From Ostrea edulis (Eukaryota): a stretch of 64,000 nucleotides of DNA. The translations under genes and the position numbers were made by a program. Within the stretch, counting starts at the first letter, position 1. Each line of letters opens with the position of its first letter. Of this stretch, positions 943 through 63,441 are shown one piece after another. The stretch is from positions 60,760,001 through 60,824,000 of the forward strand of contig NC_079172.1 in assembly GCF_947568905.1 (NCBI RefSeq), in the 5' to 3' direction. The notes below the pieces were generated by a model. It was not told where the DNA came from and made no database searches. It saw only the letters and a list, made by a program, of their open reading frames with translations.

Positions 943-1102
943 ATGGAGACTATAACATTTAGAAGGCAAATGAACGGGTTAACACGCGTGGACATGGAGG
1001 AATATTTTGATGATGTCGAATTAGAAAATTTATACCAATGGATTGATAGAATTCCGTTATCGAGGCCGAAAAAGAACGTTGGAAAAGATTTTTCAGATGG
1101 AG
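943..1102 (+). CDS. SPEF1: SPEF1-A exon 1 (METITF...FSDG, phase-1 donor GTAAAT)
   Basis: In-frame TAG at 913-915, first ATG at 943, WIDRIPLSRPKKN motif. Confidence 0.9.
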
Positions 1103-4100
1103 GTAAATGAAACTGTGCATATTTAGTGAGCTTTCAATTTCGGCAAGGAATTAAATTTAATTTAAGCATGGAATCTTGCCAGGTAAATAGGTATGGACCT
1201 GGTGCAAACAGTATTTGATCCACTGCCAATGCAATGTTAGTCAATACAGATAAAAATTTATTTATTTATTATCATATCATAACAAAATACAGTTGTAATT
1301 AACTCAAAGTAATTTACAAATTATTTTAAAAATATATTATTAATGCTCATGGATTTGAATTACATAAACTGTTATCACTGGTTATAGATTATAATAATTG
1401 GTGAGGAAACTTGATATCATTAAAAAAGTAATAGTTGTAACTTCAACTCATTAATTAGGCTCCACTTCAAAATCGAATTTACTTTTCTTCATTTTTATCT
1501 ATCTATTGATATATTTTTTATTTTTGTTGACAACATTTTGTCATTTTCTTCATGAAAGTTTATCCTGTAATTTATCCATTACTTCATTAACATTTCTGAA
1601 ATGATCATTTCTTGAAAGTTACAGTTGGCTAGTTATATCATCAGGACCATTGATTTATTTCAATTCCTTTTCTGCTATATTTTGGATAATATTCAGTCAC
1701 TAATCCTAATCCCAGGAATGAATTAAGCTCTAAATCTTTGCAATTTGGCAAGGCCATTTACCAAGAAAAATCTGGTAGACTCTAACTATACACCTGAAAA
1801 GGAAAAGTCTCCTTTCAAACTTTTTGATTTTTAATATGTCTAAAGAACTGGCAGTGTATCATAATTTTTTGGCCCTTAGACATGACAGAGTGTTAGAATA
1901 AAATGATAGATATAGTGCATTTTCTGGAAGTAAGCATTCCAAGTAAAATCAGTGTACATTTCAGCATTATTTATTTAGTGAAACATTCTAAATCCAATTT
2001 TCATCGGCAGTCACTGGTTTTAAAACTACCGAGATGCATAAAACATGATAATCAATGGGACTATGTTACAGTGACTGTTAAGTAATAAAACATATAATCA
2101 ATGGGACTATGTTACAGTGACTGTTAAGTAAATAATGGAGGCACTTCTCAGTTTATGACATACTGAAAGTCATAAAAAAAATCTGTATGTAATATATTTT
2201 GGAAGTGGTTGTATCATAAGATCATCGATGAAGTTCATGGAACAATATTTTTCAAATTAATTTATTGACATACAGTGATAAATGGTAGACTTGAGAGTAG
2301 TTTAGGTGGCTTTGCCTAATCCCTATTCAATATTACATTGTTCTCCTATCACCACTCTGGGTATGGAGAAAGTTCTGTGCAAATACCGGTCCTCGATTAT
2401 CCATATTTATAATTAGGTTTGGAAGTCGACAAACTGTGATCAATATATATTAGAGTAATGCACTGGATTTAAAAAAGTTCAGGTGTAGACCAAGGTTTTT
2501 CAATGAAATTTAGTTAATGAAGCTATATGTTTATGTATAATATGGTGAAACAAAATTGTTAATAAATTGGGAGTTATGATAAAGTTTGTTGAATTTCTGT
2601 TCCTAGACTTATCTCTCAGAGAGTTCAATCTGCCTCTAGATTGTTTGATTGGTGATTGATCACTTTTACTGCTTGGTTATCTCCCTTGGTCTCTAACAAC
2701 TCCCATTAGTTATCCTATGCTTTTGTATGATACTGTAGTTTTTATGAATTTTAGACCAAAGACGCTTAACATCTATAGCAGTTATTATCAAAAATTTGCA
2801 TTGTTCAGCTTGAGGCAAGGTAAATTACAGAATTTACCAGATGACCTCTATTTATTTATGTAACAAATTACCAGGAGCTTAATAAAATCCCAACATTGAA
2901 CAAAACCAGAATTCAATGTTGATAATCTGTAAAACAATTTTAAAGAATATGATTATTTCAGAAAATTCTCATGTTGAATAATTTTCAATGTTGATGTCCT
3001 TAATCTATGGTATTGTGATGTTAAAATATCCATGAATGAAAACTGGGGGTTGGGGTGGGGGGGTGGTTGGGGAAGGGATGGTAATAATGGTAATAATTAT
3101 AGATATATTAATGATACATCACTTACTTAACCTCACAAGAATCAGTTATCTCCCTTGCATAGTTTGGGAGTAAACTATCTTTATAGAGTCAAATTCTAAC
3201 TACTTGTCCAAGGCATCGAGGCAGAGGATGTCGCGACAAAGAGAAATGACTACGAGTCACCTCCTGAATTAAAAATGATTATGTGTAATATTACAAGAAA
3301 ACGCCATGACTTAGCGTAGGACTGCAGTCAATGGTTTAACTAACTACCCCGGTACCCGTAAACCTTGTTACAGCTACAGGTTCTACACCTTGATTCCTAA
3401 TTCCATCTAACTCCTCTCTTGGAATCTTAGAGAAACTTTAATTATAATTAGATAAAACTGAGGAGAAATCTAATTATCATTAAAACTGTAGAGAAATTTT
3501 ATGGTCTTTTTGCATTCATAAGTTGTTCATGTTTCTATAGGATTTCCGTATTAAAGGTTACATGAAATATTATGAAATGTGTAATTATTCAACAATGTAT
3601 ACTTTGAGGACCTTGGAATGGTGGAACCTCCCCCTCCCCTCCCTCTCTCTCTCCTGTCTTTGGAATGGTGGACCCCCCTCCCTCCTGTATATTCTGATGT
3701 GTTTCCATGTAACCACTTAAACTTTCCACACATGTAGGATCCCCATAACCCCTCATACCTCTTTAACACTAAAGATATGTGCATGTACACCAGTTTTTCC
3801 CTTCTGATCTAAAGACAGTTTTCCTAGTCAAGAGTTTTTGATCCACCCTGCTCCACATTTGAATTATATGTAGCCGAGCAGATCAGAAACCCATGACTTG
3901 AGAAAATGTCTACAGACATAATATTGTTTAAGGGATGACGCCGGGATATATCCAATAAACTAAATTGTTTTCTATTTATGGTTGGCCTATAGATATGCGC
4001 TTAAAGTTAAATATTAATATTCATGAATGGCATTTACGACATGGTAGTTACTGCGTTGCATATCTATAAAGTTGAGTTGAAATTCATGGGAATTCTTTTA

Positions 4101-60767: not shown

Positions 60768-61317
60768 TCCACCTGATTTGTAATTGTTCATGTTTGTTAG
60801 ATGATAAATTTACGGATCGGTATCTTTTTGGTAAAAACTCAGCATTTAGGGTTACAGGGCCTTGTTAACAGACAAATTATTTACAATATCACTAAATACA
60901 CAAAATCATAATAAAGCGTCCGTCGCAACGAAATACCCACAATTCCTTCACACCGGAAAAGCAGTGCTTTCCAGTATATCATTCATGAATACTTCTATAA
61001 TGTGTATATCAGTCTAATATTGCATTAATTTTAGTATAACTATTTAACAAAATCAACTTTGTACAATCTCTATATATTCTCTATGGGTTTTCAATGGTTC
61101 GTTTTGCCTATTTCCAGCTACAACACCCTACGATTTTTTGAACTACTTAACAAATGATCAAACTTCCGGAATACCGAGGTGCATGACGGGAAATTCGTTG
61201 ACAACAACAACTATGGACGCTTTTGTGTACATAATGATAAAGGAATCGTTTTATTCTGTCAAATTAACACTTTTTGTTGGATCATAAAGTTTTAGGCCGA
61301 ATTCAACTAGCTGAAAA
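60768..61317. promoter_or_regulatory. Putative bidirectional promoter shared by SPEF1-B and SPEF1-C
   Basis: 550 bp between divergent ATGs; ETS-type ACTTCCGG at 61162-61169; imperfect X-box-like GTTGACAACAAC at 61197-61208. Confidence 0.6.
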
Positions 61318-63441
61318 ATGTCATTAGATAAACTTCAGTCGAGCGGTTCCGGTTTAGATGATTTCGATGATGCGGAATTAGAAGAACTTTACACATGGAT
61401 TGACACCATCCCTCTGTCCAGACCAAAGAAAAACATATCCAGAGATTTTTCTGATGGAGGTAAAATTACTTTTATGAATAAAAAGTAAAGATGTTATGAA
61501 CTAACCATGTATCATGACATTGATCTGAGCGAGATTCGACTGCCGGCTGTGGTTTTGACTGACACCCCAGACCACACCCGAAATATTTTAGACCGGTTAG
61601 CATAGTGGTTAACGGCACGCACTCGCTTCAAAATTTTCAGTGAACAAATGTAGAGATTATCTTTATTCATTTGCTGATTTTCTCATTTTTTTCTTTACAT
61701 ATGTGTTACCTTTAGAACCTTGCTTTGTGGACGGGCCTTCTGCTTGTCCGAGCTTTGCTCGGTATTAGGATTAAACTGTTGAATCTAATTTGCTTTATAT
61801 TTTTGAAACGTTTTCTGAAGAATGGCTGTTATAGACTAGTTCTATATGAATTGATATGATTTGCACAAAATCTGATAGAAAAACCTTTTCAGACTCAAAG
61901 TATATGGATAAAATGCAAACTCAATATTTGATGCCGTGGTAGATCAAGAAATTCCAAAAGGTGGGGGAGGGGGGGGGGGAGGGATAGGAAGCCCTGGTCA
62001 GGGGCCAGGGGAAAAGCTCCCTTGTTGTTAAAAAATTAATCTTCCAAATAAGACATATATATATTTAGGACTCCAAAGTGCGATGGGACTCTAAAGTGTG
62101 ATGGTCTCGCCAAAGTGCGATGGTCTGCACCAGACTCTGATGCGATGGTTCACACTCATGCGTCGAAGTGCGACGGTGTGACATGCCAAAGTGCGATGGT
62201 GTGAGACGAATGTGCCAAAGTGCGATGGTACTCATTAATGTGCCAATGTGTGATGGAGATGGAGTGATACGCCAAGGTCCGATGGTTTGTAAAACTGAAT
62301 ACACACAGTGTTTTGGTACAGACTTACCAACCGTGAGTTATTTCACCAAAATATCAATGCAAAATAGTTATAATGATAAAATCTTCATTCATTACCATTT
62401 AGTTGTCGTGTTAATGAACATAAAATTTTCCAACGTGAAATCGCATAGAATGCTTTGCATTATAGCATAACCCCCCCCAGGAATTTATTACATGTACATC
62501 ACAAATAATAAAATTTGATGATCATGTCAGCATGTTTGGTCAAAGTACTTTGCCATTCTCACAATACCTTGCCCTTGCTATCGTCCATGTAAATCTTAAT
62601 CACCCGTGCCTTTCTCCGATATCCTGAAAACATTGGTGCCAGCAGAAAGAACCTTCGTTGGTGCAAACTGACGTTGGATTTTGAAAGACATTACGAATGA
62701 TGTTATAATAACATGACGTCACAAACGTTACTCTACCCCACAACCATCGGACTTTGGAGTGTCAGACCATCGCACTTTAATGTGGTGCACCTACAAATCA
62801 TGGGCCATCACACTTTGGCTTGCCAGACCATCGCACTTTGGTGTAGCGTGCCTATAGGAGAGGGACCATCGTACTTTGGCGTGACCATTGCACTTTGGAG
62901 CGACCATCACACTTTAGAGTCTTACATATATAATTATATATATTAATTTCTATAATAAATGGATCATATTAATTTCTGAGGCGTGTGGAGGTGTGCACAG
63001 TACTGGATCTGCCACTGCAGTGCTTCATGCAGTATGTAGAGAAGGGTATCCATCAATATATTAAAACAACATTTGTTGATATTATTATATAAATCAAGTT
63101 CTTGCATTAAAGTAGTACGGTGAGTAATGCTTTAATGTGAGTATAACACTCTTAATAAAATGCGACATGATATACTATGATGTAACATACTACAGATCTA
63201 TGCTTCGCAATAAATCCACCTCTTGTACTGGGAGATATTGTCCCAGAGCTCAATATCAAGAGGACTTTTATCATTTCAACAGCACATAAAAGTTAAGATA
63301 AATTTCATTGGCAATTAATTGTACTGTAGTGTTGGTGGCAGAGATTGTCCGACATTATATACCACAACTGGTTCAAACACACAACTACACCGCTGCCAAT
63401 TCTAGCAGTCAAAAGAGGGAGAACTGGCTTCTCCTGAACAG
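61318..63441 (+). CDS. SPEF1: Sperm flagellar protein 1-like, copy C (5' part: exons 61318-61459 and 63330-63441; continues beyond the window)
   Basis: MSLDKLQ...ELEELYTWIDTIPLSRPKKNISRDFSDG|gt and VLVAEIVRHYIPQLVQTHNYTAANSSSQKRENWLLLNR|gt. Confidence 0.9.
62068..62922. mobile_element. Foldback-type MITE with TA TSD and inverted arrays of CCAAAGTGCGATGGT, in SPEF1-C intron 1
   Basis: About 9 motif copies on the left and 7 inverted on the right; termini GGACTC.../...GAGTCT flanked by TA. Confidence 0.75.

What the first reader, a model, noticed from the sequence alone, without database searches (positions are those of the whole stretch)
943..63441. Three-paralogue SPEF1 cluster diversified by modular exon duplication
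Seen: three diverged SPEF1-family genes with a shared exon grid (phase-1 intron after FSDG, 112-nt exon 2, 130-nt penultimate exon in A and B). There are duplicated frame-compatible exons at the CH domain (B) and at the coiled coil (A). Established: SPEF1/CLAMP binds and bundles ciliary central-apparatus microtubules through its CH domain and dimerises through its C-terminal coiled coil; it is usually described as a single gene. Inference: the locus could build a combinatorial set of binding heads, linkers and dimerisation tails for different cilia types (sperm, gill, larval), a small-scale Dscam-like system in a cytoskeletal protein. I do not know of this being described, but I cannot search.
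Basis: partly seen in the sequence, partly recalled or inferred. Interest (0 to 1): 0.82.

Follow-up and report, generated by a model that had tools for sequence, protein, structure and literature searches.

The report
Oyster SPEF1 gene cluster, alternatively spliced
The window holds three real flat-oyster genes for the cilia microtubule protein SPEF1, and duplicated exons let them swap part of the microtubule-binding head or the dimerising tail; public annotation already predicts these forms, so it is an undescribed but ordinary case of exon-duplication splicing, not a Dscam-like system.

Summary
The window is Ostrea edulis: RefSeq isoforms match it at 100%.

- **Genes.** Gene A is on the + strand at 943-22970. 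Gene B is on the - strand at 60982-51713. Gene C starts at 61318 on the + strand and is cut by the window end. All three are SPEF1-family genes with the stated exon grid.
- **Gene B.** It has two 112-nt copies of exon 2. Including both or neither breaks the reading frame. RNA-like contigs show E1-2a-E3 and E1-2b-E3 but no 2a-2b joint. RefSeq already models both forms.
- **Gene A.** It has three tandem terminal coiled-coil exons, not two. Each has the same acceptor, the same phase and its own stop codon. T2 and T3 are used in O. edulis models. T1 is used in Crassostrea and Saccostrea models.
- **Conservation.** All duplicated exons are conserved across oyster genera under purifying selection (omega 0.03-0.36).
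- **Assembly gap.** The gap at 28002-28259 is intergenic. In Magallana gigas, A and B lie 7.6 kb apart with no gap.
- **Phylogeny.** Gene B belongs to the canonical lophotrochozoan SPEF1 type. Gene A is an old mollusc-wide paralogue.

The "Dscam-like" label is overstated, because there are only 2 and 3 variants and tissue-specific use is untested. I found no paper describing this. The only earlier scan notes are on this same window.

The parts
943..1102 (+). Gene A (LOC125657494) exon 1: ATG to FSDG plus 1 base, 160 nt. Encodes the start of the CH_2 domain, including the RPKKN..K basic residues that contact beta-tubulin.
6789..6900 (+). Gene A exon 2, 112 nt, single copy.
8212..8444 (+). Gene A exon 3 with two donors. 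The short form ends at 8345 and the long form at 8444, adding 33 aa. Both are phase 1.
12833..13247 (+). Gene A internal alternative first exon (MDYSERF..., Ser/Arg/Lys-rich, no Pfam hit). It gives CH-less isoforms X7 and X16 and is conserved in Crassostrea.
15145..15247 (+). Gene A exon 4 (linker), 103 nt.
16398..16421 (+). Gene A 24-nt micro-exon cassette (EKKNQLL).
17697..17759 (+). Gene A 63-nt cassette exon.
19592..19630 (+). Gene A 39-nt cassette exon.
20825..20954 (+). Gene A penultimate exon, 130 nt. Encodes the acidic N-terminal half of the coiled coil.
22061..22195 (+). Gene A terminal exon T1, with its own stop. It has Asn at the core position equivalent to mouse L212. It is absent from the 16 O. 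edulis models retrieved but is used in Crassostrea and Saccostrea.
22486..22620 (+). Gene A terminal exon T2, with its own stop. Used in most O. edulis isoforms.
22836..22970 (+). Gene A terminal exon T3, with its own stop. Used in isoforms X2, X6, X13 and X15. It lies inside the 3'UTR of T2 transcripts.
28002..28259 (.). Assembly gap. It is intergenic, flanked by tandem repeats, and lies outside all three genes.
51713..51829 (-). Gene B terminal exon (single copy), with the canonical ...RPTG..RR tail.
52145..52274 (-). Gene B penultimate exon, 130 nt.
53363..53422 (-). Gene B 60-nt cassette exon.
55350..55401 (-). Gene B exon 4 (linker), 52 nt.
55963..56180 (-). Gene B exon 3, 218 nt.
58098..58209 (-). 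Gene B exon 2b, 112 nt, mutually exclusive with 2a.
58780..58942 (-). Conserved intronic stem between 2a and 2b. The arms at 58942-58930 and 58792-58780 form 13 perfect base pairs (15-16 when folded) around a loop of about 137 nt.
59014..59125 (-). Gene B exon 2a, 112 nt, mutually exclusive with 2b.
60656..60791 (-). Gene B exon 1, with an internal acceptor at 60772 that the upstream 5' exon splices to.
60937..60982 (-). Gene B alternative upstream 5' coding exon (MIYWKALL...).
61318..61459 (+). Gene C exon 1, head-to-head with B. The two ATGs are 527 bp apart.
63330..63441 (+). Gene C exon 2, 112 nt. The rest of C lies beyond the window.

Best explanation
This is the SPEF1 gene cluster of the flat oyster Ostrea edulis. 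Gene A is a mollusc-wide paralogue. It lies tail-to-tail with gene B, the canonical type, and B lies head-to-head with its inverted duplicate, gene C.

**Shown.** Protein diversity comes from ordinary alternative splicing of tandemly duplicated or phase-compatible exons.
1. In B, exons 2a and 2b are mutually exclusive. Each is 112 nt, so including both or neither shifts the frame and gives an early stop.
2. In A, three nested terminal exons (T1, T2, T3) share one acceptor motif (TTGTAG|AT) and phase 0, and each ends in its own stop. The tail is set by which 3' splice site joins the 130-nt penultimate exon. The downstream copies stay in the 3'UTR up to a shared poly(A) region.
3. The disordered linker of A varies through an alternative donor and three cassettes that all keep phase 2.
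4. An internal first exon gives isoforms without the CH domain.

**Inferred.**
- The exon-2 swap retunes helices 2-4 of the CH domain. This includes one residue at the alpha-tubulin seam contact (Tetrahymena Y68, which is Asp in 2a and Leu in 2b).
- The tail swap replaces 6 of the 10 core positions and the basic half of the parallel dimeric coiled coil. This could change dimer partner choice, stability or phase separation.
- T1 carries a conserved Asn at the position of mouse L212. That should favour T1-T1 pairing over mixed dimers.
For: - **Species and gene models.** RefSeq O. edulis isoforms match the window at 100% and are rebuilt exactly from window exons.
- **Mutual exclusivity.** Equal length, equal phase and frame breakage are shown. 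Two RNA-like runs carry E1-2a-E3 and E1-2b-E3 as 163-nt alternative unitigs with GT..AG joints and no 2a-2b joint. Their 2b:2a depths are 40.6:15.4 and 28:36.5. RefSeq B X7 uses 2a, while X2, X5, X6 and X8 use 2b. C. virginica X5 uses 2a, while X1 and X3 use 2b.
- **Tails.** T2 and T3 appear in O. edulis isoforms that are otherwise identical: X1/X2, X3/X6, X12/X13 and X11/X15. T1 tails appear in C. gigas, C. virginica X1-X5, S. cucullata X1-X3 and one Logan transcript. A Crassostrea T2 transcript runs on through T3 in its 3'UTR.
- **Selection.** Omega is 0.36 for 2a, 0.11 for 2b, 0.09 for T1, 0.03 for T2 and 0.10 for T3. Synonymous sites between paralogous exons are saturated.
- **Synteny.** The B/C head-to-head pair occurs in Saccostrea. 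A and B lie tail-to-tail in M. gigas, with T1-T2-T3 in the same order.
- **Structure mapping.** Alignments to PDB 9NW3, 2EE7 and 9IJX were read against the contact and core residues given in 10.1101/2024.12.02.626492 and 10.1101/2025.07.31.667833.
Against: - The functional consequences are entirely inferred. No binding, dimerisation or localisation data exist for any isoform.
- T1 use in O. edulis itself was not seen among the 16 of at least 17 RefSeq A isoforms retrieved.
- RefSeq isoform combinations are model-built, so free combination of head, linker and tail is not shown by full-length molecules.
- The runs laid are assembled contigs of a coded organism, 95-99% identical to the window and only guessed to be RNA. 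They cannot prove that double inclusion is absent, and they give no tissue.
- Only one of the four exon-2 tubulin-contact positions differs between 2a and 2b.
Confidence: 0.8

Rival explanations
1. One reading: a Dscam-like combinatorial code. Heads, linkers and tails are freely combined to give each cilium type (sperm, gill, larva) its own SPEF1 identity.
For: - The exon architecture is modular and preserves phase.
- RefSeq lists tails T2 and T3 on several linker backgrounds.
- The 2a:2b ratio differs between two runs.
Against: - There are only 2 mutually exclusive variants and 3 tails, against tens per cluster in Dscam1.
- The head and tail variants sit in different genes: 2a/2b in B, T1-T3 in A. 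No single transcript combines them.
- No docking/selector layout was found. There is only one conserved intronic stem.
- No tissue data exist, and the RefSeq combinations are computational.
Confidence: 0.1
2. The extra exons are splicing noise or decaying duplicates. One isoform per gene does the work, and the others are annotation-pipeline by-products or NMD substrates.
For: - No T1 isoform was retrieved for O. edulis.
- Isoform X17 is an aberrant T2-into-T3 out-of-frame splice.
- Gnomon models can over-call isoforms.
Against: - All five duplicated exons keep open frames, splice sites and the same order in Ostrea, Magallana/Crassostrea and Saccostrea. Omega is 0.03-0.36 while synonymous sites are near saturation.
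- Both 2a and 2b unitigs have comparable depth in two runs.
- Assembled transcripts carry T1, T2, T3 and 2a.
Confidence: 0.07
3. The gene cluster is an assembly artefact: A and B/C were joined wrongly across the N gap.
For: A 258-N gap at 28002-28259, flanked by tandem repeats, lies between A and B.
Against: - In M. gigas, A and B lie tail-to-tail 7.6 kb apart in a locus without any N.
- The A and B products map to the same chromosome-scale record in O. edulis, C. virginica and S. echinata.
Confidence: 0.02

Closest known systems
Vertebrate SPEF1/CLAMP (human Q9Y4P9; PDB 2EE7, 9NTM; mouse Spef1-CC, PDB 9IJX)
   Same: - N-terminal CH_2 domain: 131-133 bits to 2EE7 for both A and B.
- A disordered linker.
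- A C-terminal parallel-dimer coiled coil with the same a/d core pattern and basic residues.
   Different: - Oysters have three genes.
- Oysters have alternative versions of CH helices 2-4 (B, and C in Saccostrea) and of the C-terminal two thirds of the coiled coil (A).
- Oysters have CH-less isoforms.
- A has Lys at the position of R31/R32.
Tetrahymena SPEF1A/SPEF1B paralogues (PDB 9NW3)
   Same: More than one SPEF1 gene per genome, with partly distinct localisation and partial redundancy. The CH domain binds the central-pair seam.
   Different: In the ciliate the diversity comes from whole-gene duplication only. The oysters add exon-level substitution inside the genes.
Tandem-duplicated exon substitution / mutually exclusive exons (surveyed in PMC5740500, PMC8373072, PMC9741552, PMC9013439)
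   Same: - Adjacent homologous exons of equal length and phase.
- Exactly one is included.
- The frame breaks otherwise.
- The duplication is old and both copies are under purifying selection.
   Different: I found no paper listing SPEF1 among such genes. A's tails are nested alternative terminal exons, where a stop codon decides the tail, rather than internal mutually exclusive exons.
Drosophila Dscam1
   Same: Variation arises from tandemly duplicated alternative exons.
   Different: - Dscam1 has 12, 48, 33 and 2 variants in one gene, with docking/selector RNA pairing and isoform-specific homophilic binding.
- Here there are 2 variants in B and 3 in A, in different genes.
- Exclusivity here is explained by frame and stop codons.

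Membership tests
SPEF1/CLAMP | N-terminal CH_2 (PF06294) calponin-homology domain | tested here: met
   The exon pieces of A, B and C hit PF06294 in order. Full-length A and B proteins carry PF06294 and PF11971. Both score 131-133 bits to the human SPEF1 CH domain, 2EE7.
SPEF1/CLAMP | Conserved tubulin-contact residues (Tetrahymena R25, K28, R32, H55, S62, Y68, T72, R76, K80) | tested here: inconclusive
   By alignment to 9NW3, R25, K28, H55, R76 and K80 are kept in A and B. R32 is Arg in B and C but Lys in A. S62 is Ala. Y68 and T72 vary. The residue list comes from 10.1101/2024.12.02.626492.
SPEF1/CLAMP | C-terminal dimerising coiled coil homologous to Spef1-CC | tested here: met
   Matches to 9IJX: B tail 45.7 bits, A with T2 34.5 bits, and the T1 tail (C. 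gigas) 28.2 bits. The heptad core is kept except Asn for L212 in T1.
SPEF1/CLAMP | Binds and bundles microtubules; localises to the central pair or ciliary tip | not testable with these tools
   Needs protein biochemistry or imaging.
Mutually exclusive exons from tandem exon duplication (B exon 2a/2b) | Adjacent homologous exons with the same length and phase | tested here: met
   Both are 112 nt with AG/GT sites, run from phase 1 to phase 2, and are 58% identical at the amino-acid level.
Mutually exclusive exons from tandem exon duplication (B exon 2a/2b) | Transcripts carry exactly one of the two | tested here: met
   E1-2a-E3 and E1-2b-E3 joints occur in two runs, with no 2a-2b joint. RefSeq X7 carries 2a and X6 carries 2b. 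Contigs cannot prove that rare double inclusion is absent.
Mutually exclusive exons from tandem exon duplication (B exon 2a/2b) | Both copies conserved and under purifying selection | tested here: met
   Both copies are present in Saccostrea echinata and used in C. virginica. Omega is 0.36 for 2a and 0.11 for 2b.
Alternative terminal exons (A T1/T2/T3) | Each alternative carries its own stop and is joined to the same upstream donor | tested here: met
   Searches show the shared acceptor motif, phase and stops. T2 transcripts retain T3 in the 3'UTR.
Dscam-like hypervariable exon arrays | Large arrays of alternative exons giving hundreds or more isoforms | tested here: not met
   There are 2 variants in B and 3 in A. 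About 17 A models and 8 B models exist in RefSeq.
Dscam-like hypervariable exon arrays | Docking-site/selector RNA pairing that enforces the choice | tested here: inconclusive
   One conserved 13-16 bp stem lies inside the 2a-2b intron. It is not in a docking/selector layout, and the fold z-scores are only -1.4 and -1.6.
Dscam-like hypervariable exon arrays | Isoform-specific homophilic recognition | not testable with these tools
   The Asn-for-Leu core change in T1 hints at partner selectivity, but this is inference only.

The most novel reading that the evidence does not exclude
The three A tails are orthogonal dimerisation modules. T1 pairs only with itself through its conserved core Asn at the mouse-L212 position, and T2 and T3 have their own preferences. 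The 2a and 2b heads of B (and C) differ in seam affinity. CH-less A isoforms would then make one-headed dimers. Together these would let one oyster cell build distinct SPEF1 cross-linkers for different microtubule arrays or cilium types. That would be a natural allelic series for the seam-binding and phase-separation functions now under study in SPEF1.
Probability: 0.2. Interest if true: 0.6.

Novelty: new member of a known kind. Interest (0 to 1): 0.4.

Why it matters
SPEF1 is under active study as the protein that binds the microtubule seam and holds the ciliary central pair together through a dimerising, phase-separating coiled coil. Oysters, and apparently other bivalves, keep alternative versions of exactly these two modules and have conserved them across genera. 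These versions are ready-made natural variants for testing which residues set seam binding and dimer specificity. Bivalves also carry several very different cilium types. The practical limit is that the isoforms are already in RefSeq and the splicing mechanism is ordinary. The value therefore lies in the biological lead, not in a new kind of system.

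Tried and rejected
- **Exact-product look-ups failed.** P0123, P0129 and P0013 returned nothing, because only the longest product of a gene is on record. I used S. echinata P0128 and M. gigas P0014 instead.
- **Orthology of the exon-2 copies is unresolved.** Identities between the B and C copies are 50-71% with no clear pairing. I cannot say whether the exon duplication came before the B/C gene duplication. 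The second exon-2 copy of C in O. edulis, if present, lies outside the window.
- **No docking/selector pairing found.** The search turned up only one conserved intronic stem. Whole-region fold z-scores are not significant.
- **No X-box found.** Strict RFX/X-box patterns are absent from the B/C bidirectional promoter and from the sequence upstream of A.
- **No extra SPEF1 fragments.** tblastn with 131 homologues found none between 23.5 and 51.7 kb.
- **Rooting is weak.** It rests on a midpoint root, the shared "RPTG" tail and a poorly resolved basal region. That A and B/C split before the bivalve-gastropod split is probable, not proven.

Full report
**Identity of the window.** The window has 35% G+C and a single run of 258 N at 28002-28259. 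Six-frame searches for the FSDG motif and for CH-domain motifs found three exon-1-like and four exon-2-like pieces. Pfam CH_2 (PF06294) is hit piecewise and in order by exon 1 (profile 1-24), exon 2 (23-62) and exon 3 (59-94). A word search with the exon-3 reading frame returned near-identical proteins, including a 207-aa spliced product from a Logan transcript. Searching with that product returned many bivalve and gastropod "sperm flagellar protein 1-like" proteins. The Ostrea edulis RefSeq isoforms match the window at 100%, so the window is O. edulis.

**Gene A (LOC125657494, + strand).** Joining window exons at AG/GT sites reproduces RefSeq isoform X1 exactly. The exons are:
- E1 943-1102
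- E2 6789-6900 (112 nt)
- E3 8212-8345 or 8212-8444 (alternative donor)
- an internal alternative first exon, 12833-13247, which gives CH-less isoforms
- E4 15145-15247
- three cassettes that all keep phase 2: 16398-16421, 17697-17759 and 19592-19630
- E7 20825-20954 (130 nt)
- three tandem terminal exons: T1 22061-22195, T2 22486-22620 and T3 22836-22970

The terminal exons share the acceptor TTGTAG|AT and phase 0, and each has its own stop.

Of the 16 O. edulis A isoforms retrieved, 12 use T2 (one of them, X17, through an aberrant T2-into-T3 splice) and 4 use T3. Several pairs differ only in the tail. None uses T1. T1-type tails are used in C. gigas X3, C. virginica X1-X5, S. cucullata X1-X3 and a Logan transcript.

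A Crassostrea T2 transcript (L001) runs collinearly through T3 in its 3'UTR. The tail is therefore chosen by 3' splice-site selection inside one terminal transcription unit. The first stop codon reached then defines the protein.

**Gene B (- strand).** The exons reproduce RefSeq X5 exactly:
- E1 60791-60656, plus an upstream 5' exon 60982-60937 that splices to an acceptor at 60772
- exon 2a 59125-59014 and exon 2b 58209-58098
- E3 56180-55963
- E4 55401-55350
- cassette 53422-53363
- penultimate exon 52274-52145 (130 nt)
- terminal exon 51829-51713

Exons 2a and 2b are both 112 nt. Including both gives a stop at codon 87, and skipping both gives a stop at codon 49.

I laid public runs on 55900-60900. 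Two runs cover only the exons. They hold two alternative 163-nt unitigs, E1-2a-E3 and E1-2b-E3, with GT..AG joints and no 2a-2b joint. The 2b:2a depths are 40.6:15.4 and 28:36.5. A DNA-like run is collinear with the genome. These are contigs from a coded organism that is 95-99% identical to the window, so they show presence, not absence. RefSeq already models both forms: X7 carries 2a, while X2, X5, X6 and X8 carry 2b. The same holds in C. virginica.

**Gene C (+ strand).** E1 61318-61459 and E2 63330-63441 lie head-to-head with B, and the two ATGs are 527 bp apart. The rest of C is beyond the window. In Saccostrea echinata the same head-to-head pair exists. The B orthologue there has both 2a and 2b, and the C orthologue (272 aa, CH_2) also has two exon-2 copies.

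**The assembly gap.** The N run lies in intergenic DNA rich in tandem repeats (arrays at 24995-25578 and 27166-27636). It is 5 kb beyond the last coding exon of A and 23 kb from the end of B. No SPEF1 exon or intron spans it. In Magallana gigas, A and B lie tail-to-tail 7.6 kb apart in a locus without any N, with T1-T2-T3 in the same order. The cluster is therefore real.

**Conservation and selection.**

| Exon | Compared with | Omega |
|---|---|---|
| 2a | S. echinata | 0.36 |
| 2b | S. echinata | 0.11 |
| T1 | M. gigas | 0.09 |
| T2 | M. gigas | 0.03 |
| T3 | M. gigas | 0.10 |

Synonymous sites between the paralogous exons are saturated, so the duplications are old. Mytilus edulis isoforms of one gene also show two tail types. 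A second Mya arenaria SPEF1 gene has two quite different tails. Alternative coiled-coil tails therefore recur in bivalve SPEF1 genes.

**Phylogeny.** B and C form a clade with 100/99 support. A belongs to a clade holding both bivalve and gastropod sequences, with 99-100% support. An exhaustive profile-free search with B found second, non-A SPEF1 genes in Aplysia, Haliotis, Gigantopelta, Pecten, Mya and Ruditapes, and also a nemertean gene. These share B's "...RPTG..RR" tail. B and C are therefore the canonical lophotrochozoan SPEF1 type. A is an old mollusc paralogue with a characteristic N-terminal extension. Both A and B are equally close to the human SPEF1 CH domain, at 133 and 131 bits. 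The rooting is only by midpoint and by the shared tail.

**Where the variable exons fall in the protein.** Alignment to Tetrahymena SPEF1A (9NW3) places exon 2 at residues 38-75, that is helices 2-4. According to 10.1101/2024.12.02.626492, the contacts are as follows:
- beta-tubulin contacts R25, K28 and R32 are in exon 1
- H55, S62, Y68 and T72 are in exon 2
- R76 and K80 are in exon 3

Exons 2a and 2b differ at 16 of 38 residues. One of these is the Y68 position (Asp in 2a, Leu in 2b), and its neighbours on helix 4 also differ.

According to 10.1101/2025.07.31.667833, mouse Spef1-CC is a parallel dimer with core residues I184 to L226, an acidic N-terminal half and a basic C-terminal half. 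The L208A/L212A mutant is monomeric and inactive. The constant 130-nt exon encodes the acidic half. The alternative terminal exon encodes core positions 201-226 and the basic residues. T1 aligns without gaps to 9IJX and has Asn at the L212 position. This Asn is conserved in Ostrea, Magallana, Crassostrea and Saccostrea. From general coiled-coil principles, a buried Asn favours Asn-Asn pairing. T1 may therefore be a self-selective tail. This is inference only.

**A conserved intronic element.** Between 2a and 2b, two blocks are conserved between Ostrea and Saccostrea (59014-58930 and 58793-58699). They end and begin with perfectly complementary 13-mers at 58942-58930 and 58792-58780. These 13-mers occur only once each in the window. 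They form a 15-16 bp stem in both the minimum-energy and centroid folds of the Ostrea region, and an 11-14 bp stem in the Saccostrea folds. Whole-region z-scores are weak (-1.4 and -1.6). The role of the stem in exon choice is unknown.

**Comparison with what is known, and verdict.** The genes are members of SPEF1/CLAMP. The splicing devices are the well-known tandem-exon-duplication types: mutually exclusive exons enforced by frame, and nested alternative terminal exons. The Dscam comparison fails on scale, on architecture, and because the head and tail variants are in different genes. RefSeq already contains the isoforms. Full-text searches found no paper describing SPEF1 paralogues or isoforms in bivalves. 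The finding is real, is correctly read at the sequence level and is over-interpreted at the systems level. It is of moderate interest as a natural variant series for SPEF1 seam binding and dimerisation.

Noticed in passing
window 58780-58792 and 58930-58942 (- strand RNA): Perfectly complementary 13-mers sit at the facing ends of two intronic blocks conserved between Ostrea and Saccostrea, inside the intron between B exons 2a and 2b. They are unique in the window and fold into a 15-16 bp stem. They may regulate splicing.
   Followed up: partly
window 33290-37108 (+), fragment 31114-31797 (-): A non-LTR (LINE-type) retrotransposon carrying Exo_endo_phos, RVT_1 and zf-RVT domains. The RT domain is split over two reading frames near 35140-35170. 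It lies between gene A and the SOCS gene, and M. gigas has no such gene called between A and B.
   Followed up: partly
window 42699-43349 (-): A single-exon open reading frame of 216 aa with SH2 and SOCS_box domains (a SOCS-family gene). It lies between A and B in O. edulis. tblastn with it found no match in the M. gigas A-B interval.
   Followed up: partly
window 22486-22970 (+): RefSeq isoform X17 joins a donor inside T2 (after ...GQYS) to the T3 acceptor out of frame, which gives a truncated coiled coil. T3 and about 290 nt downstream are unusually conserved with M. gigas (82% identity; T3 dS is only 0.30). This hints at RNA-level constraint in the shared 3'UTR.
   Followed up: partly
L002 2644-2757 and 5710-5823 (- strand): In Saccostrea echinata the gene C orthologue also carries two 112-nt exon-2 copies. 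Exon-2 duplication is therefore not limited to gene B. The second copy in O. edulis C would lie beyond the window end.
   Followed up: partly
window 9159-9879, 12189-12491, 21396-21965, 24995-25578, 27166-27636, 49630-50765: Several tandem-repeat arrays produce long spurious ORFs. Three of them lie inside introns of gene A. Interspersed repeat fragments are also shared between A introns (4897-6173, 10003-10287) and the 47.5-49.3 kb and 53.6-53.9 kb regions.
   Followed up: no
proteins P0135, P0139, P0281-P0283: Heterodont clams have a second, B-type SPEF1 gene with very many RefSeq isoforms: up to X22 in Ruditapes and at least X13 in Mya. In Mya this gene has two unrelated C-terminal tails.
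   Followed up: partly
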